Virus record (IMG/VR): IMGVR_UViG_3300028676_000003
Span: 124,001-188,000 of that record
DNA length: 64,000 nucleotides
Reading direction: 5' to 3' (one strand)
This document shows positions 9,475-23,579 of the stretch, piece by piece; position 1 is the first letter of the stretch, and each line of letters starts with the position of its first letter. Under the pieces are notes generated by a model. It worked only from the letters and a program-made list of their open reading frames with translations, ran no database searches and had not been told where the DNA came from. A program made the position numbers and the translations under genes.

Positions 9475-9506
9475 CTTGCATTTACCTTAATTTGGTCGTA
9501 CCTTTG
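9475..9506 (+). promoter_or_regulatory. Bacteroidota-type promoter (proximal) upstream of the DNA polymerase
   Basis: CTTG-N20-TACCTTTG. Confidence 0.7.
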
Positions 9507-9520
9507 TATAAATATTTATA
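9507..9520. promoter_or_regulatory. Palindromic back-to-back TATTTATA motif between the divergent HNH and polymerase genes
   Basis: TATAAATATTTATA is a perfect 14-bp palindrome. An identical copy is at 16704-16717. Confidence 0.55.
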
Positions 9521-9527
9521 ACTAACT

Positions 9528-18070: not shown

Positions 18071-19651
18071 ATGGCAATAACAATAAATTCAGTAGACTTA
18101 GGCCCTATATGGTTTCAGAGTGGTAATGGTATTCCTGACCACATGGCTTTTAAAGGAACTCTTTTCATTGATTTGGACACGGCTATTGAATATATTAATA
18201 AAGATGGATTTTTTCTTTGGGAAGTAAATGGTGGTGGTGGTCCTGTAGGACCTGATATTTATATTTCAGGTATGTCATTTAACAATGGAAACTATGACCT
18301 TATTTTAAATAGAAATGATGGAGTTAACTTTACCCAAAATTTAGGTATATTAGCGAGTGACATGACAGTTACTGGTGGAACATACAATGTTAATACAGGT
18401 ATAGTTACGTTCACCAATAATTCAGGTGGTACATTCAATGTTACTGGGTTTACTAGTGGTATGACTGATAGTTATACTACTGGTGCTACACTAGTTGGTA
18501 ATTCTATTGAATTTGATAACAACATTTATGGTTCTGATTTTTATAGTGTTGATTTGACACCTGTTATATCTGGTAAAACAGATAATTCTTTATTTAATTT
18601 ACATACTGGTAACACTAGTAATCCACATCAAACATCTTTTAATAATCTAATATCAACTGCACATACACATTCAATTAGTGATATTGATAATTTACAAACT
18701 ATTTTAAATTCAAAATTTGATAATACAGGTGGAACAATAAGTGGTAATATAACAGTAAATACTATTTCTGCAACTACCTATCAAAACTTACCAACAAATC
18801 TTTTTGTTGGTGGTACAGGTACAACAAATACAGTTCCAAAGTTTACTAGTTTAAACAATATTGGTAATAGTTCTATTATTGATAACGGTAGTTTTATAAG
18901 AATAAATGGTCAAATAACTGGTACTACATCCATGTACGATTTTTATGATTCTAGTAGTACACTTAGAACACGTTTAACTGGTTCAGGTGCTCAAACTTGG
19001 TTTTTAAACAATGGTTTAGCAAATGTTGGGTCTGTAGCATATTCGACCCCTAATAGTAACCCAGGAATTGTATTCCTTGGTCTTACTGGTAATGGTCGAA
19101 CAGATATTAGGTTAAATTCACAAACTGGTGGTTTAGCTTTTGCAACTGGAACTGGTAGTGGTACCACATCAACCCAAGTTTTACTTACTACAAATGGTAA
19201 TTTTTTAATAAACACTACTACTGATAATAATACCGATAAATTACAAATAAATGGTTCATTAGTTGCAACAACGATTAAAAAAAGTGGTGGTTTATCAACA
19301 CAATTTTTAAAGGCAGATGGTAGCGTTGATACTAATCCTTCACAGATTAGACTTTCTGCCAGTACAGCAATTTCAACTCTAACTAATGATGTTAGTGGAT
19401 TTGGTCAGAATGGTCGAAATGTAATCATTGATAATTCAACTGCTATTACACTTACAACTAGTGTTTCATCTGAATCTAACTTTATTGCATCATATTTAAA
19501 ACATGGTATAACTCCTGTAACATTTTCTGCTGGAAGTGGTACTGTTGTATCTGCTTTAACTGGAACCTTATTAATGAATGGTGGAGCTGGAAGTCGTGCT
19601 ACTTTAAATAGAGTGGATAATTTATTTTATTTAACAATTACAAATGTTTAA
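18071..19651 (+). CDS. Fibre/whisker-like mosaic structural protein
   Basis: Gly/Thr/Asn-rich modules (HTGNTSNPHQT, HTHSISDI, DKLQINGS, TQFLKADGSVD) of the kind seen in phage fibres. Confidence 0.55.
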   Translation: MAITINSVDLGPIWFQSGNGIPDHMAFKGTLFIDLDTAIEYINKDGFFLWEVNGGGGPVGPDIYISGMSFNNGNYDLILNRNDGVNFTQNLGILASDMTVTGGTYNVNTGIVTFTNNSGGTFNVTGFTSGMTDSYTTGATLVGNSIEFDNNIYGSDFYSVDLTPVISGKTDNSLFNLHTGNTSNPHQTSFNNLISTAHTHSISDIDNLQTILNSKFDNTGGTISGNITVNTISATTYQNLPTNLFVGGTGTTNTVPKFTSLNNIGNSSIIDNGSFIRINGQITGTTSMYDFYDSSSTLRTRLTGSGAQTWFLNNGLANVGSVAYSTPNSNPGIVFLGLTGNGRTDIRLNSQTGGLAFATGTGSGTTSTQVLLTTNGNFLINTTTDNNTDKLQINGSLVATTIKKSGGLSTQFLKADGSVDTNPSQIRLSASTAISTLTNDVSGFGQNGRNVIIDNSTAITLTTSVSSESNFIASYLKHGITPVTFSAGSGTVVSALTGTLLMNGGAGSRATLNRVDNLFYLTITNV

Positions 19652-20375
19652 TCCAAATTTACATTACGAATATAGTAGTAATGTTGTATTACCTAATATA
19701 GCAACAGGTAGTATGGTATTATATTTAGATGCTGGGAATCCATTGTCATATCCTGGAACTGGTACAACATGGAATGATTTGAGTGGTAATAATTATAACT
19801 CAACAATAAGTGGTGCAACTTTTAATAATTCTAATTATTATAATAACTTTTTATTAGATGGAATAAATGATAATGTAATATCTCCATTAGCCGCAGCTAA
19901 AACAAATACTGATAGTTTTACTATTTCTTTTTGGTCAACACCAAGACAAAGTGGAGGAGGGCCAACTATTTCTAGAGGAAATGATAATTTTGGTTCTGGT
20001 TGGAGTATGTCGTGTGCAATGTTTAGTGGTGGTAGTAGTTTTGCCTTAGTTATAAATGGTGTTCAATATACAACTAGTTATACTGGGGCAAGTTTTGATT
20101 TAAATACATTTTATCATTTCAGTGGTACTTATAATAGACCAAGTGGTGTTATTAAAATGTATGTACAAGGTATTTTAGTTAGTAGTGGTACTACTGTTGT
20201 TAATGGAACACTTAGAGATTCAACCAGAGGGTTTGTTTTAGGTCAGATAAGTAATAGTAGTTTTGGTAAATATAATATTAGTGAGGTCATAGTATATAAT
20301 AGAGTTTTAACTGATAATGAAATAAGAGGTAATTATTTATATGGTTTGAACCGTTATAACTATTATAAACACTAA
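19644..20375 (+). CDS. LamG / concanavalin A-like lectin domain protein
   Basis: LYLDAGNPLSYPGTGTTWNDLSGN, FTISFW, YHFSGTY, IKMYVQG, ISEVIVYNRVLTDNEI. Confidence 0.8.
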   Translation: MFNPNLHYEYSSNVVLPNIATGSMVLYLDAGNPLSYPGTGTTWNDLSGNNYNSTISGATFNNSNYYNNFLLDGINDNVISPLAAAKTNTDSFTISFWSTPRQSGGGPTISRGNDNFGSGWSMSCAMFSGGSSFALVINGVQYTTSYTGASFDLNTFYHFSGTYNRPSGVIKMYVQGILVSSGTTVVNGTLRDSTRGFVLGQISNSSFGKYNISEVIVYNRVLTDNEIRGNYLYGLNRYNYYKH

Positions 20376-20525
20376 TTATTCTCCATATAAATCCTTCTTT
20401 TGAACACATTTTTCTTTGATAAGTTTCTCAACAAAAGCAAACATTTTAAGTCCATTTTCCTCACAGTACTTTTTAAGTATCTCATGTGTATTAGGTGTGA
20501 TTTTAAGGTTTTTATCTCGTTTCAT
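20376..20525 (-). CDS. Unannotated 49-aa ribbon-helix-helix (CopG/Arc-like) DNA-binding protein
   Basis: My translation: MKRDKNLKITPNTHEILKKYCEENGLKMFAFVEKLIKEKCVQKKDLYGE. Pattern is strand (KNLKI), helix, Gly turn, helix. It is below the ORF-track length cutoff. Confidence 0.7.
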   Translation of the reverse strand: MKRDKNLKITPNTHEILKKYCEENGLKMFAFVEKLIKEKCVQKKDLYGE

Positions 20526-20541
20526 AAGGTCTTTTACAATA

Positions 20542-20572
20542 AGTATGACGAAAGTATGAAAAAAAACATACT
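20542..20572. repeat. Candidate RHH operator: AGTATG direct repeats plus an inverted copy
   Basis: AGTATG at 20542 and 20553 (11-bp period) and CATACT at 20567, just upstream of the RHH start. Confidence 0.45.
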
Positions 20573-20620
20573 AAAAGTTAGATATCGAAGAAACTTATCT
20601 TTCTTTTGATAAAACGTGAA

Positions 20621-20628
20621 TATTTATA
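20621..20628 (+). promoter_or_regulatory. Putative late promoter for the tail sheath
   Basis: TATTTATA, a motif shared by most structural transcription units. Confidence 0.6.
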
Positions 20629-20677
20629 ATAAAGAAAACTACAAAGTAAATAATAACATAAAACAAAAAAAGAAAAT

Positions 20678-23512
20678 ATGTCAACAAAAGTATTTGTAAG
20701 TCCTGGGGTTTATACATCAGAAAAAGACTTAACTTTTATTACACGTCAAGTAGGGGTAACTCAACTTGGTTTGGTGGGTGAGACTACAATCGGTCCAGCT
20801 TTCCAACCAATCTTCATTAGCAACTACGGTGAATTCCAATCATTCTTTGGTGGCCTAAACGCTACTAAGGTTAAAGATACTGGTGCGCCTCAATATGAAT
20901 TACCTTATATTGCCAAATCATATTTAACTCAAGCAAATCAATTATTCGTAACAAGAGTATTAGGTTTCTCAGGTTACTATGCTGGTAAAGCATGGGGTAT
21001 TACTCTTGATGCCGCTGTAGATACTACAACCGTTGCACCTACAGGTGGAAGTAACGTAGCAAACATCATAACATACTCAACAACATCTGCTGGAACAAGT
21101 ACATTTACATCGGCTAGTCCTATTGTAACTGCGCTTTTAGCTGATAACTTGATACAAGACCAATTACAATACATTTCTTTATTGAATGTAGGTCAAACAG
21201 GTAGTGTTACAACAACATTTATTAAAACTGGAAACTCATTTACTGGTGCTTCATTCAACTATATCATTACCGCTACTGGTAGTACTGGTAGTACTTTAAC
21301 AGGTGTTGCTTCAGGTGTAACTGTAACTTATTCAGGTACAGGTTATACAGATGTTGAAAACCAATTGGTTGCGTTATTACGTTCAAGAGGTACAACAGAC
21401 TTAGCTACACAATTTCCAGCATTTGAGGTAACTGGTGCTACTGGTGTTATCTTCGACCCAGCATTTACTGATTCTGAAATGAATCCATTAGGAGATTTCT
21501 CTTTAAGTGGTTTCTCTCAAACTCAAGGTGCTTTTGATAACTTGGTATCTTTAGATAGAACTAAAAAGAATTACTTACCAAGAGTTCTTGGTAGAAGCGT
21601 TCAAAATGGTAATACACCATTATACCTTGAAGAATTCTACAACAGTATGTTCGAAGAACTTGTTGCTGAAGGAAAAGTAAGAGGACTTAAACAAACAATC
21701 GTTAGTTATAATAATGAATTCTCTGATTACCAACAACAATACTCGCCAGCGGTTACACCTTATGTTGTATCTGAGTTACGTGGTACAAAGGTGTTGAAAT
21801 TATTCAGATTCCATACAATTTCTGATGGTAATGCGGCTAATGAGCAATTCAAAATCTCATTCGTTAACATTAAACCTGATACAAGAGAGTTTGACGTAAT
21901 CATTAGAAGCTACTACGATAGTGATGCTTCACCAACAGTATTAGAAAGCTTTAGCCGTTGTACAATGGACCCAAATTCTAATAACTATATTGGTAGAAGA
22001 ATTGGTACACTTGATGGTTTATATCCTTCTAAATCAACTTACGTTCTTATAGAAATGGATGATACATCTGATACAAGTGATGCATTCCCAGCTGGTTTCA
22101 TTGGATTCCCAATTAGAGACTACCAAGAGAATAGCAACACAAGTGTTGTAGCTCCAAAATTAACATACAAAACTGCTTATGGTGCTTTTGAAAACAAACG
22201 TAAATTCTATTTAGGTTTATCTGAGACAATTGGTATTGATGCTGATTTCTTCGATTACAAAGGTGTACCACAAACAAATAATCCAAACGTTTGGACTGGA
22301 ATGACTAACGGTTTCCACATGGATATCGATGCTACTGGTGCAACAATTGACAACGTTAACGTTGTTATAAATACTTCAGGTGGAACTTACTCTCCTATAT
22401 TCTTATTCGACACAGGTGATGCTGAGTTTAGAACTGAATCAGGACTTGCTGGTGGACCATATGAAAAAATCTACGCTCGTAAATTTACATTCGCACCTTA
22501 TGGTGGATTTGATGGATGGGATGTTTACAGAACTAGAAGAAGTAATCTTGATAGCTACATAATCAATGGTACCAACGGTGCTAACGGTTTAACTTCAGGT
22601 GCATTTAGTAACAAAGCTTTATCTAATGGAGACATGGGTATTACATCTGATTACTATGCGTTTTTAGAGGCTATTTGGACATTCAGAAACCCTGAAGCGA
22701 TTAACATTAACGTGTTTGCTACACCTGGGATTGATAATTTCGATAATACTAACTTAATTGAAGATACTATCGAGATGATTGAAGAAGAAAGAGCGGATTC
22801 ACTTTACATCATGACAACACCTGATTTAAACACTGGTGGAGATGTGATGAGTGTTGAAGATGTTACTGACTATTTAGATGGTATGTACGATAGTAACTAT
22901 TCTTGTACATATTGGCCTTGGGTACAAATCAACGATACTGAAAATAACGTGTTTATCTACGTTCCACCAACAAGAGATGTTGTAAGAAATATTGCCTTAA
23001 CTGATAATGTTTCATTCCCTTGGTTTGCGGTTGCGGGTATTCAACGTGGTGATGTTGATGCGGTTCAAGCTAGAAAGAAATTAACACTTTCTGAAAGAGA
23101 TGAATTGTATGAAAACAGAATTAATCCGATTGCTACATTTACATCTGATGGTATCAAAATTTGGGGTAATAAAACACTTCAAGTTAGAGAATCTGCTCTT
23201 AATAGAATCAACGTAAGAAGACTTTTATTACAAGCAAGAAAACTTATCTCTGCTGTATCTATTAGATTGTTATTTGAACAAAATGATAACGTGGTTAGAA
23301 ACCAATTCTTATCTATAGTTACTCCTATCTTGGATAACATTAGAAGCGAAAGAGGTTTAACAGATTTCCGTGTGGTTCTTTCAAACGACCCTGAAGATAT
23401 CGACAGAAACCAATTAACTGGTCAAATATTCTTGAAACCAACAAGAGCCCTAGAATTTATTCAATTAGAGTTCGTAATCATGAATACAGGTGCTTCATTT
23501 GATAATGTATAA
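20678..23512 (+). CDS. Tail sheath protein (T4 gp18-like)
   Basis: N-terminal VSPGVYTSEKD. C-terminal YWPW, VPPT, PWFAVAG.QRG, LYENRINPI, IWGNKTL, RINVRRL, KPTRALEFI. Confidence 0.95.
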   Translation: MSTKVFVSPGVYTSEKDLTFITRQVGVTQLGLVGETTIGPAFQPIFISNYGEFQSFFGGLNATKVKDTGAPQYELPYIAKSYLTQANQLFVTRVLGFSGYYAGKAWGITLDAAVDTTTVAPTGGSNVANIITYSTTSAGTSTFTSASPIVTALLADNLIQDQLQYISLLNVGQTGSVTTTFIKTGNSFTGASFNYIITATGSTGSTLTGVASGVTVTYSGTGYTDVENQLVALLRSRGTTDLATQFPAFEVTGATGVIFDPAFTDSEMNPLGDFSLSGFSQTQGAFDNLVSLDRTKKNYLPRVLGRSVQNGNTPLYLEEFYNSMFEELVAEGKVRGLKQTIVSYNNEFSDYQQQYSPAVTPYVVSELRGTKVLKLFRFHTISDGNAANEQFKISFVNIKPDTREFDVIIRSYYDSDASPTVLESFSRCTMDPNSNNYIGRRIGTLDGLYPSKSTYVLIEMDDTSDTSDAFPAGFIGFPIRDYQENSNTSVVAPKLTYKTAYGAFENKRKFYLGLSETIGIDADFFDYKGVPQTNNPNVWTGMTNGFHMDIDATGATIDNVNVVINTSGGTYSPIFLFDTGDAEFRTESGLAGGPYEKIYARKFTFAPYGGFDGWDVYRTRRSNLDSYIINGTNGANGLTSGAFSNKALSNGDMGITSDYYAFLEAIWTFRNPEAININVFATPGIDNFDNTNLIEDTIEMIEEERADSLYIMTTPDLNTGGDVMSVEDVTDYLDGMYDSNYSCTYWPWVQINDTENNVFIYVPPTRDVVRNIALTDNVSFPWFAVAGIQRGDVDAVQARKKLTLSERDELYENRINPIATFTSDGIKIWGNKTLQVRESALNRINVRRLLLQARKLISAVSIRLLFEQNDNVVRNQFLSIVTPILDNIRSERGLTDFRVVLSNDPEDIDRNQLTGQIFLKPTRALEFIQLEFVIMNTGASFDNV

Positions 23513-23524
23513 TAAATAAAAATC

Positions 23525-23549
23525 AAGAAACCCCTTAATGGGGTTTTTT
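23525..23549 (+). terminator. Intrinsic terminator after the sheath gene
   Basis: AAACCCC-TTAAT-GGGGTTT followed by a T run. Confidence 0.8.
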
Positions 23550-23579
23550 GTTTTATCACATATTTATAATTAAAACACA

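What the first reader, a model, noticed from the sequence alone, without database searches (positions are those of the whole stretch)
20376..20628. Hidden ribbon-helix-helix regulator with a helically phased operator, divergent from the tail sheath gene
Seen: a 49-aa minus-strand ORF missed by the track, with an RHH pattern (KNLKI strand, THEILKKYCEENG helix and Gly turn, MFAFVEKLIKE helix). Directly upstream are AGTATG twice with an 11-bp period (20542, 20553) and an inverted CATACT (20567). About 50 bp further is the sheath TATTTATA motif. Known: CopG/Arc/MetJ-type RHH dimers bind arrays of short direct or inverted repeats and autoregulate. Inference: a small switch that may link its own repression to expression of the major tail operon.
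Basis: partly seen in the sequence, partly recalled or inferred. Interest (0 to 1): 0.62.

Follow-up and report, generated by a model that had tools for sequence, protein, structure and literature searches.

The report
Phage RHH regulator beside sheath promoter
A real, strongly conserved 49-residue ribbon-helix-helix DNA-binding gene and its three-site repeat array sit at a fixed distance upstream of the tail sheath promoter in a large group of uncultured giant phages, most likely a small self-regulating switch that also tunes sheath expression; it is a tidy new example of a known kind of regulator.

Summary
Observation confirmed. The 49-aa minus-strand ORF (20376-20525) is a real gene. More than 400 relatives are 80-100% identical, dN/dS is about 0.10, and the gene lies divergent from the sheath gene in every locus that holds both. 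RHH assignment rests on convergent weak evidence: sub-threshold Pfam and PHROG matches, a family profile hitting the solved viral RHH regulator SvtR (E 6e-5), and an AF2 model (pLDDT 86) whose Foldseek neighbours are almost all RHH proteins.

AGTATG-N5-AGTATG-N8-CATACT (20542-20572) is unique in the 368-kb genome and is the best-conserved stretch of the intergenic region beside the promoter box. Its end lies 47 nt from the sheath promoter box ATATTTAT (20620) in about 69 of 78 distinct sequences, though the spacer sequence drifts. The exceptions differ by -20, +10 and +11 nt. Insertions always fall on the RHH side. Gene and array were lost together at least three times while the promoter stayed. 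Distant homologues keep the architecture and spacing with different hexamers.

Best reading: an autoregulated RHH whose operator also modulates the sheath late promoter, but is not essential to it. Binding, sign of regulation and the RHH promoter are untested. The sheath is monocistronic, so "major tail operon" is too broad. New member of a known kind; moderate interest.

The parts
20376..20525 (-). 49-aa ribbon-helix-helix protein gene. Predicted strand is about residues 5-10 (KNLKIT), helix A 11-24, a turn at N24-G25-L26, and helix B 28-40.
   Evidence: ORF. More than 400 relatives at 80-100% identity. dN/dS about 0.10, with third-codon-position entropy highest in this frame. RHH family hits. 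AF2 pLDDT 85.7. Foldseek neighbours are Arc, CopG, omega, ParG and AvtR.
20539..20548 (.). Operator site 1 (core AGTATG 20542-20547), a direct repeat.
   Evidence: 92-100% conserved in 50 distinct intergenic regions. Position table.
20551..20559 (.). Operator site 2 (core AGTATG 20553-20558), 11 bp from site 1.
   Evidence: The 5-nt gap is invariant in exact matches.
20560..20566 (.). A-rich 8-nt spacer between sites 2 and 3 (with 20559). Its length is fixed; its sequence is A/T-rich.
20567..20573 (.). Operator site 3 (core CATACT 20567-20572), an inverted copy 14 bp centre to centre from site 2.
   Evidence: Changes in sites 2 and 3 are not compensatory (13 distinct sequences have AGTAAG with CATACT unchanged), so this is not a selected hairpin.
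20574..20602 (.). Spacer of fixed length and poorly conserved sequence, between the array and the sheath promoter. The full spacer from array end to box is 47 nt.
   Evidence: 47 nt in about 69 of 78 distinct sequences. Exceptions are 27, 57 and 58, plus a few at 46 or 48. Distant homologues give 47, 47, 47 and 37.
20603..20608 (+). CTTTTG, the upstream element of the sheath promoter (a T-rich element about 14-17 nt before the box).
   Evidence: TTT is invariant. A tTTt element sits at -17..-14 in the genome-wide class consensus. It is kept in RHH-less relatives.
20620..20633 (+). Sheath promoter box ATATTTAT (20620-20627) plus AATAAA. It belongs to a phage promoter class of about 54-59 sites.
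   Evidence: Invariant. ATATTTAT lies upstream of 59 ORFs, peaking 20-29 nt before the start codon. 49 of 101 genomic occurrences are 12-45 nt upstream of a start.
20649..20656 (+). Conserved AATAATAA element in the presumed sheath mRNA leader.
   Evidence: 78-92% conserved. Function unknown.
20678..23512 (+). Tail sheath gene (944 aa), transcribed divergently from the RHH gene.
   Evidence: PHROG 23 tail sheath, E 1e-58. Pfam sheath domains are below their cut-offs.
23524..23550 (.). Bidirectional intrinsic-terminator-like hairpin that ends the sheath transcription unit.

Best explanation
The 49-residue protein is a ribbon-helix-helix (RHH) DNA-binding regulator.

Proposed mechanism (inferred): dimers bind the three AGTATG-type sites, two direct at 11 bp and one inverted at 14 bp, arranged ->-><-. 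The array lies between the RHH start codon and the sheath promoter. It therefore lies in or over the RHH gene's own promoter or leader, and binding there gives negative autoregulation.

The same nucleoprotein complex sits at a fixed, helically phased distance, 47 nt from the ATATTTAT box. That puts the site centres about 54 to 79 bp upstream of the box centre. From there it modulates this one late-class promoter. The most likely effect is damping or delaying sheath transcription, as SvtR does for a structural gene of the archaeal virus SIRV1. Upstream activation cannot be excluded.

Shown here: the gene is real and under purifying selection; it has an RHH-like sequence and fold; the array is conserved and unique in the genome; gene and array occur and are lost together; the spacing to the sheath promoter is rigid.

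Inferred: the protein binds the array; autorepression; any effect on the sheath promoter and its sign.
For: Gene reality:
- 435 tblastn-confirmed relatives in viral contigs and 506 protein clusters.
- dN/dS about 0.10.
- More conserved than the sheath on the same contigs, for example 90% against 72%.

RHH assignment:
- PF10723 in 49 of 50 close members at E<0.01; PHROG Arc-like 582 in 50 of 50.
- All ten best named ESM-Atlas look-alikes are RHH families.
- Members of the broader family hit Omega_Repress, 56B_RHH, ParG and RHH_1.
- The family profile hits PDB 2KEL (SvtR/56B) at E 6.1e-5 across strand, helix A and helix B.
- AF2 pLDDT is 85.7. Foldseek top rows are Arc (TM 0.71) and CopG (TM 0.68/0.74, rmsd 2.1), then omega, ParG, AvtR and NikR.

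Pairing of protein and array:
- The array is present, exact or degenerate, in essentially all loci with the gene.
- It is absent in all 5 loci that lack the gene. These 5 are nested in the sheath tree and need at least 3 independent losses.
- Homologues at 43-57% identity keep the ->-><- layout but with other hexamers: AGGTAG/AGGCAG/CTTACT; AAGCAG twice; AAGATA twice plus TATCTT. This is what a co-evolving regulator and operator would show. It is not what a promoter element read by a conserved polymerase would show.
- A GIY-YIG nuclease carries a C-terminal domain 71% identical to this protein. That fits the domain being a DNA-binding module.

Coupling to the sheath promoter:
- The 47-nt spacing holds in about 69 of 78 distinct sequences despite sequence drift. 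Exceptions are -20, +10 and +11 nt. Distant relatives give 47, 47, 47 and 37 nt.
- Every insertion (homing endonuclease, tandem repeats, short inserts) lies between the array and the RHH start, never between the array and the box.
- Of about 54 ATATTTAT promoters in this genome, only the sheath's has such an array.

Precedent: SvtR represses its own gene and binds about 80 nt upstream of a structural gene's promoter. AvtR covers about 100 nt between divergent promoters and both activates and represses (PMC5569661).
Against: - No binding data exist.
- The window protein misses Pfam's curated cut-off (19.7 against 21 bits).
- Each single structural match has a non-significant E-value (0.2-3).
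- The RHH gene's promoter is not identified. It has neither the exact early (TTG-N20-TACCTTTG) nor the late (ATATTTAT) box.
- The array lies at least 47 nt upstream of the box, too far for simple occlusion of the sheath promoter.
- RHH-less relatives keep an intact sheath promoter, so any effect is dispensable.
- The predicted DNA-facing strand core K-N-x-K-I is the same in homologues whose repeats differ. Specificity would then have to come from positions 4 and 10 or from the N-terminal arm.
- The helical-turn exceptions number only two or three independent events.
Confidence: 0.55

Rival explanations
1. Purely local autoregulation. The RHH binds the array only to control its own gene, and any further targets lie in the unknown host genome. 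The neighbouring sheath promoter is unaffected, and the fixed spacing reflects the RHH gene's own promoter architecture in the spacer.
For: - RHH-less relatives keep a normal sheath promoter.
- The array is far upstream of the box.
- In 28 of 68 distinct sequences, a weak Bacteroidota -7-like box (TAhhTTTn) lies just upstream of site 3 in the RHH direction. That would put the RHH promoter inside the spacer.
- No second array exists in the phage genome.
Against: - The -7-like box is absent in the window itself and rarely matches TAnnTTTG fully.
- An RHH promoter in the spacer would fix its distance to the array, but not the array's distance to the sheath box.
- Spacer-length exceptions are whole helical turns.
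- Distant relatives keep 47 or 37 nt to the box, while the distance to the RHH start ranges from 0 to 22 nt.
Confidence: 0.2
2. Homing-endonuclease accessory. The small RHH belongs to a family that travels with GIY-YIG homing endonucleases, as a targeting, immunity or regulatory subunit. The array is a homing or protection site rather than a transcriptional operator for phage genes.
For: - A GIY-YIG+RHH fusion lies exactly between the array and the RHH gene in L004. Decayed copies are in L063, L040 and L141.
- Two distant homologues (P0218, P0215) sit directly upstream of, and overlap, GIY-YIG/NUMOD3 genes.
- PHROG 945 'endonuclease' matches the RHH weakly over its C-terminal part.
Against: - The free RHH gene is present in 91 of 96 distinct sheath loci, while the nuclease is sporadic and often decayed.
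- Strong purifying selection acts on the free gene.
- The array's phasing with the sheath promoter has no explanation under this reading.
- The window itself has no nuclease gene next to the RHH gene.
Confidence: 0.1
3. The array is read by something else, such as a host or phage factor, or it acts through intrinsic bending by the A-tract as an upstream element of the sheath promoter. The RHH protein would then have an unrelated target.
For: - Fixed phasing with the sheath promoter.
- The A-rich 8-nt spacer.
- The predicted DNA-facing strand core is unchanged in homologues with different repeats.
Against: - Gene and array were lost together at least three times.
- The repeat sequences diverge together with the RHH lineage, while the promoter box stays constant.
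- The array is unique in the genome, so it is not a general factor site.
Confidence: 0.1
4. Sites 2 and 3 form an RNA or DNA hairpin (AGTATG-A8-CATACT) that acts as an attenuator or terminator.
For: A perfect 6-bp inverted repeat with an 8-nt loop.
Against: - Changes are not compensatory.
- The stem is short and A/T-rich.
- Site 1 is an equally conserved direct copy that a hairpin does not explain.
- One distant relative keeps two direct repeats with no clear inverted copy (L164).
Confidence: 0.03

Closest known systems
[quoted passage not shown]
   Same: - It is the best solved-structure match of the family profile (E 6.1e-5) and shares the LK-YC--N-L motif.
- It is a small viral RHH that represses its own gene and binds about 80 nt upstream of a virion structural gene's promoter.
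- AvtR covers the region between two divergent promoters (PMC5569661).
   Different: - It belongs to an archaeal virus with TBP/TFB-type promoters.
- Its operator is an imperfect inverted repeat, not a ->-><- hexamer array.
- No fixed helical phasing has been reported for it.
- Here the host is inferred to be Bacteroidota, and the target is a phage-specific ATATTTAT promoter.
Arc and Mnt repressors of Salmonella phage P22
   Same: - Phage RHH proteins of about 50 residues.
- Arc is the top Foldseek row (TM 0.71), and the PHROG 'Arc-like repressor' families match.
- On my own knowledge, Arc binds as two dimers on subsites one helical turn apart and autoregulates from a divergent promoter region.
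   Different: - Arc and Mnt control the immI region (ant), not a structural gene.
- Their operators are palindromic.
- Sequence identity is only about 19%.
Omega repressor (pSM19035) and ParG
   Same: - Members of the broader family hit Omega_Repress (best E 2.2e-6) and ParG; ParG PDB 1P94 scores E 0.085.
- On my own knowledge, omega dimers read short non-palindromic repeats in direct and inverted orientation, like the ->-><- layout here.
   Different: - They are plasmid copy-number and partition regulators.
- Omega's heptads are contiguous (7-bp period), not spaced at 11 and 14 bp.
CopG / RepB-RCR_reg (PF10723) plasmid copy-control RHH proteins
   Same: - PF10723 is the best Pfam hit of the window protein.
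- CopG chains align at TM 0.68/0.74 and rmsd 2.1 over 43-44 columns.
   Different: - The window protein scores below Pfam's gathering cut-off.
- There is no replication gene context.
I-TevI-type GIY-YIG homing endonucleases with a modular DNA-binding domain
   Same: In relatives, a GIY-YIG nuclease carries this RHH domain at its C-terminus and sits next to the array. On my own knowledge, I-TevI also acts as an autorepressor at its own late promoter.
   Different: - I-TevI uses a zinc finger, a minor-groove helix and a helix-turn-helix, not an RHH.
- The window itself has only the free RHH gene.

Membership tests
Ribbon-helix-helix (RHH / MetJ-Arc) superfamily | Topology: a short N-terminal beta-strand with alternating residues, then helix A, a tight turn (often with Gly), and helix B, in about 45 residues. 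| tested here: met
   The AF2 model has residues 1-10 extended, H11-24, a turn at N24-G25-L26 and H28-40, with pLDDT 85.7. Foldseek rows are nearly all RHH chains, at TM 0.65-0.74. A strand is not assigned in the monomer model, as expected when the partner chain is missing.
Ribbon-helix-helix (RHH / MetJ-Arc) superfamily | Significant sequence-profile relationship to known RHH proteins. | tested here: met
   The family profile A2 hits PDB 2KEL at E 6.1e-5 over 38 residues. Members hit Omega_Repress at 2.2e-6 and 56B_RHH at 2e-7. PHROG Arc-like families reach a best E of 2.9e-5.
Ribbon-helix-helix (RHH / MetJ-Arc) superfamily | Obligate homodimer with an intertwined two-stranded sheet. | tested here: inconclusive
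   The only dimer test gave no verdict, so it counts neither way. Testing this needs biophysics or a structure.
Ribbon-helix-helix (RHH / MetJ-Arc) superfamily | Sequence-specific binding to arrayed short repeats through the sheet. | not testable with these tools
   Only indirect evidence exists: co-occurrence, co-loss and co-variation of gene and array.
Pfam PF10723 RepB-RCR_reg | Score at or above the curated gathering cut-off (21 bits). | tested here: not met
   The score is 19.7 bits, E 8.5e-4. 49 of 50 close members match at E<0.01, but I do not file the protein as a member of this family.
Pfam PF21432 56B_RHH (SvtR-like) | Family-model match of the protein itself. | tested here: not met
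   The window protein has no PF21432 hit at E<=1. Only 5 of 90 broader-family members match. The link to 2KEL is at profile level.
Autoregulated RHH repressor-operator module (Arc, CopG, omega, SvtR type) | Operator repeats overlap the regulator's own promoter or transcript start. | tested here: inconclusive
   The array lies 16 nt upstream of the start codon here, and 0-22 nt in distant relatives. The RHH promoter is not mapped. The candidates are weak: ATACTTAT, with one mismatch to the late box, is not used elsewhere, and a -7-like box lies beside site 3 in 28 of 68 relatives.
Autoregulated RHH repressor-operator module (Arc, CopG, omega, SvtR type) | Repeats phased so that neighbouring dimers lie on one face of the helix. 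| tested here: met
   Sites 1 and 2 are 11 bp apart, invariant across relatives. The period is 10-11 bp in distant relatives. Site 3 is 14 bp from site 2, which is not one full turn.

The most novel reading that the evidence does not exclude
The RHH-array complex is a dedicated, face-of-the-helix-dependent control element for a single promoter, the sheath's, out of about 55 phage late-class ATATTTAT promoters in a Bacteroidota-infecting jumbo phage lineage. It would set sheath timing or dosage independently of the other structural genes.

Regulator and operator have co-diversified into at least four specificity types while keeping a 47-nt (or 37-nt) phasing. A GIY-YIG homing endonuclease has captured the resident regulator's DNA-binding domain and inserted beside its operator.
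Probability: 0.3. Interest if true: 0.6.

Novelty: new member of a known kind. Interest (0 to 1): 0.45.

Why it matters
Almost nothing is known about how transcription is timed in giant phages of Bacteroidota. This locus offers a compact, testable control unit: one 49-residue protein, three 6-bp sites and one promoter. It is conserved in hundreds of environmental phage genomes and comes with natural 'experiments', namely losses, whole-turn spacer changes and operator swaps.

If the protein does gate the sheath promoter, it would be a bacterial-virus counterpart of the archaeal SvtR/AvtR systems. It would also be a small, portable, orthogonal repressor-operator family for Bacteroidota genetics.

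The analysis gives two genome-wide promoter classes as well. Those classes point to a Bacteroidota host and will help annotate this uncultured phage group.

Tried and rejected
- **Homodimer prediction.** 'No answer': 0.36 against a mark of 0.42. This is not evidence either way.
- **First AF2 model from the shallow alignment (pLDDT 72.5).** Its searches were uninformative. Foldseek pdb gave only Arc at E 5.7. VIA wide gave only generic helical hairpins at Z<=4.3. BFVD and the Atlas gave weak rows, with a few RHH families among them.
- **SUMO2/3 hits of the profile.** These are a chance 15-residue motif match (LMKAYCERQGLSM) and were rejected.
- **tblastn of the protein against 50,697 named phage genomes.** No match. 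DNA search found only short unrelated Synechococcus phage hits under the neighbouring gene.
- **Sequencing runs.** Only DNA metagenomes, mostly peat and soil, hold the locus. No RNA run was found, so read laying was not used and no transcript start could be mapped.
- **Sigma-70-type scan.** Fewer hits than in shuffles and none convincing in the intergenic region. The host is inferred to use the Bacteroidota -33/-7 promoter type anyway.
- **ATACTTAT as a late-class promoter for the RHH gene.** It has the right distance (21 nt) and an upstream T-run. But one-mismatch variants of the box are hardly used anywhere in the genome, and this variant is used only here. It is kept only as a weak candidate.
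- **TACTTTCG inside site 2 as a -7 box.** The final G is present in only about half of the relatives. Weak.
- **Further operator arrays in the phage genome.** Neither exact nor one-mismatch 8-mer pairs gave anything beyond chance.
- **Hairpin reading of sites 2 and 3.** Rejected because there is no compensatory change.
- **Maximum-likelihood tree with the default method.** It did not finish. FastTree was used instead.

Full report
**1. What is in the sequence**

AGTATG occurs at 20542 and 20553 and CATACT at 20567. TATTTATA occurs at 20621. The window is bases 124001-188000 of a 368,549-bp IMG/VR virus record judged complete. The genome is 33.6% G+C. Its near-identical DNA is found in peat and soil metagenomes only, and no RNA run holds it.

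**2. The ORF is a real gene**

- The search for related loci found 435 confirmed relatives in viral contigs, the best 80 at 80-100% identity.
- The word-index protein search found 506 clusters, several already called 'hypothetical protein' by other pipelines. This very protein is among them.
- In 85 distinct coding sequences, mean nucleotide identity is 76% but dN/dS is about 0.10. Variation is concentrated at third codon positions of this frame.
- On shared contigs the small protein is more conserved than the sheath protein, for example 90% against 72%.
- The overlapping plus-strand ORFs are therefore shadows of this gene.

**3. It is an RHH protein at superfamily level**

- The window protein hits Pfam RepB-RCR_reg at 19.7 bits, just under the cut-off of 21.
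- It hits PHROG 'Arc-like repressor' families at E about 3e-4.
- 49 of 50 close relatives repeat the Pfam hit, and 50 of 50 repeat the hit to PHROG 582.
- The ten best named ESM-Atlas look-alikes are all RHH families.
- A profile search of 1.8 billion representatives gave 270 proteins at E<=1e-3.
- An alignment of 90 of these (A2) contains members that hit Omega_Repress, 56B_RHH, ParG, HicB, RHH_1 and MatP_C.
- The A2 profile hits the solved RHH regulator SvtR/56B (2KEL) at E 6.1e-5 across strand and both helices, and ParG at 0.085.
- With A2 as input, AlphaFold2 gives pLDDT 85.7, an extended N-terminus, and helices 11-24 and 28-40.
- Foldseek against the PDB returns Arc, TacA, CopG, omega, McdB, MazE, AtaR, AvtR, ParG, NikA, MatP and NikR as its top rows, at TM 0.53-0.74. 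Each has a non-significant E-value, as expected for 49 residues.
- Hydrophobic L7 and I9 should face the core. N6, K8 and T10, invariant in the close clade, together with position 4, should then face the DNA. This last point is an inference from RHH structures.

I file the protein in the RHH superfamily, but in no single Pfam family.

**4. The repeat array**

- It is the only triple of these hexamers within 60 bp in the genome. Chance placement gives such a cluster (three within 31 bp) in about 2% of trials.
- One-mismatch 8-mer pairs elsewhere are at chance level and lie in coding DNA.
- In 50 distinct homologous intergenic regions, the conserved blocks are 20539-20548, 20551-20559, 20567-20573, TTT at 20604-20606, and 20620-20633 (ATATTTAT invariant), with a weaker block at 20649-20656. 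The rest drifts.
- The consensus layout is (A/T)AAGTATGA, 3 nt, AAGTATGA, an A-rich stretch, then CATACTAA. The gaps between the hexamer cores are fixed at 5 and 8 nt.
- Changes in sites 2 and 3 are not compensatory: 13 distinct sequences have AGTAAG opposite an unchanged CATACT. A hairpin is therefore not what is conserved.

**5. The promoters of this phage**

K-mer enrichment upstream of ORFs shows two classes.

*The first class* is TTG-N20-TACCTTTG, at 61 sites.
- It matches the Bacteroidota sigma-A consensus of -33 TTTG and -7 TAnnTTTG (PMC6847099).
- Shine-Dalgarno-like motifs are nearly absent, at 13 of 306 upstream regions.
- Together these point to a Bacteroidota host. That is an inference.

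*The second class* is ATATTTAT.
- It lies upstream of 59 ORFs, mostly 20-29 nt before the start codon, and includes many structural genes.
- A T-rich element sits 14-17 nt upstream of the box.
- The box is stringent: 49 of its 101 genomic occurrences are promoter-placed, against at most 20% for any one-mismatch variant.

The sheath gene's box at 20620 belongs to this second class, but lies unusually far (58 nt) from the start codon. The sheath gene ends at a strong bidirectional terminator at 23524-23550. The next genes, a 133-aa ORF and the tail tube gene, have their own boxes. The unit downstream of the array is therefore the sheath gene alone, not a tail operon.

**6. Gene, array and sheath promoter form one unit**

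*Arrangement.* All 80 best RHH loci have the sheath gene divergent from the RHH gene. The gap is about 150 bp in 75 of them.

*Spacing.*
- The array's end lies 47 nt from ATATTTAT in about 69 of 78 distinct sequences.
- By contrast, the distance from the box to the sheath start codon spreads over about 25 nt.
- The distance from the array to the RHH start is 15-17 nt, or 26-38, 78, 168, 219, 250 or 501 nt where insertions are present.
- The few deviant spacers are 27, 57 and 58 nt, that is -20, +10 and +11, plus some at 46 or 48 nt.

*Insertions.* They include the following.
- An intact GIY-YIG gene with a C-terminal RHH domain (L004).
- Its decayed remains (L063, L040, L141).
- Four 21-bp tandem repeats (L146).
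- L103 is not an exception: a second RHH gene copy there lies next to the array.

All these insertions lie on the RHH side of the array.

*Losses.* Five sheath loci with enough upstream sequence lack the RHH gene. All five also lack the array but keep CTTTTG-N12-(A)ATATTTAT. On a sheath tree of 96 rows, these five are nested among RHH-bearing phages and need 4 changes, at least 3 of them forced by well-supported branches.

*Distant homologues.* Homologues at 43-57% identity, found by the profile search, are again divergent from a sheath gene. Their intergenic regions show the same layout with other hexamers.
- L163: AGTATG, AGTATG, CATACT.
- L162: AGGTAG, AGGCAG, CTTACT.
- L164 and L165: AAGCAG twice at an 11-bp period.
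- L166: AAGATA twice at 10 bp, plus TATCTT.

The array ends 47, 47, 47 and 37 nt before the box, while its distance to the RHH start varies from 0 to 22 nt.

Of about 54 ATATTTAT promoters in this genome, only the sheath's carries an array.

**7. Mechanism**

*Shown:*
- A conserved RHH-like gene.
- A conserved, unique repeat array.
- Joint presence, joint loss and co-variation of gene and array.
- A length-constrained, turn-quantised spacer to the sheath promoter.

*Inferred:*
- RHH dimers occupy the three sites. Sites 1 and 2 lie on one face of the helix. Site 3 is inverted, across an A-tract.
- Because the array lies directly upstream of the RHH start codon (and abuts it in L164), it must lie within the RHH promoter or leader. 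This gives autorepression, as in Arc, CopG, omega and SvtR.
- The complex also acts on the sheath promoter in a position-dependent way.

I favour damping or delay over activation, for two reasons. The promoter persists and is presumably active in phages that lost the module. And the closest characterised relative, SvtR, represses a structural gene from about 80 nt upstream, possibly by spreading along the DNA (PMC5569661). AvtR shows that both signs are possible, so activation from an upstream site remains open.

The RHH promoter itself is unresolved. The candidates are ATACTTAT, which overlaps site 1, and a weak -7-like box next to site 3, present in 28 of 68 relatives but not in the window.

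**8. Comparison and novelty**

This works like the classic autoregulated RHH repressor-operator modules. In its link to a virion gene it is closest to SvtR/AvtR of archaeal viruses. It is a member of the RHH superfamily but of no curated family.

New here:
- The setting, an uncultured, widespread jumbo-phage lineage with an inferred Bacteroidota host.
- The phased coupling to one promoter of a phage-specific class.
- The natural series of operator variants.
- The endonuclease fusion.

None of this is categorically new, and all functional claims are comparative. Interest is moderate (0.45).

No genetic code other than table 11 was used.

Noticed in passing
whole genome G000 (window = 124001-188000), e.g. 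window 9499-9527 upstream of 9528: 61 upstream regions carry TTG-N20-TACCTTTG(TA), the Bacteroidota -33/-7 promoter type. Shine-Dalgarno-like motifs precede only 13 of 306 ORFs. Together these point to a Bacteroidota host for this 368-kb phage.
   Followed up: partly
whole genome; in the window e.g. 20620, 23560, 24000, 16709: A second, very stringent promoter-like box, ATATTTAT, with a T-rich element 14-17 nt upstream. It lies before 54-59 ORFs, mostly structural, typically 20-29 nt from the start codon. The factor that reads it is unknown.
   Followed up: partly
L004:2884-3336 (-): A 150-aa GIY-YIG nuclease (Pfam 25 bits, above its cut-off). Its C-terminal 38 residues are 71% identical to the RHH protein. 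It is inserted exactly between the array and the RHH gene. Decayed copies are in L063, L040 and L141, and the sister phage L003 lacks it.
   Followed up: partly
contigs of P0218 and L167:137-836: More distant RHH homologues (about 50% identity) lie immediately upstream of, and overlap, GIY-YIG/NUMOD3 endonuclease genes. The family therefore has a second recurrent context besides the sheath gene.
   Followed up: no
L103 (intergenic region between 2528 and 5001): There are two RHH gene copies. One sits next to the array and sheath gene as usual. The second lies beyond two plus-strand ORFs (567 and 108 aa).
   Followed up: no
L146, between the RHH start and the array: Four tandem copies of a 21-bp unit (GGGGTAAATTTGATTTTATAG-like) push the RHH start 168 nt away from the array. 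The 47-nt spacing to the sheath box is kept.
   Followed up: no
spacer equivalent to window 20574-20602 in L149, L153, L156, L150, L154, L107, L155, L146: Several clades have a strong hairpin (up to -13 kcal/mol) directly beside site 3. The stem sequences differ between clades, but the position is the same. The window lacks it. Function unknown.
   Followed up: no
window 20376-20525, residues H14 and C21: H14 (80 of 90) and C21 (88 of 90) are nearly invariant across the broad family. C40 alternates with I/L. The YC motif is shared with SvtR (2KEL). A conserved His/Cys pair on one face of helix A is unusual for RHH proteins and might bind a metal or sense redox state.
   Followed up: no
window 20373-20378: The stop codon of the plus-strand 243-aa gene (TAA, 20373-20375) abuts the stop codon of the RHH gene (20376-20378). 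There is no terminator between these convergent genes, so their transcripts may overlap as antisense.
   Followed up: no
window 19644-20375 (+): The gene downstream of the RHH gene encodes a Laminin_G_3 / concanavalin-A-like lectin-fold protein (E 6e-17), probably a fibre or receptor-binding part. Among 80 RHH loci, only the identical relative L082 has it, so the RHH-sheath pair borders a variable region.
   Followed up: no
window 20678-23512: The sheath protein is long (944 aa). Only its C-terminal third resembles known sheaths. The nearest named phages are Microcystis phage Mel-JY01, Flavobacterium 'immuto' phages and Bacillus SP-15, at 32-40% identity, so the lineage has no cultured close relative.
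   Followed up: no
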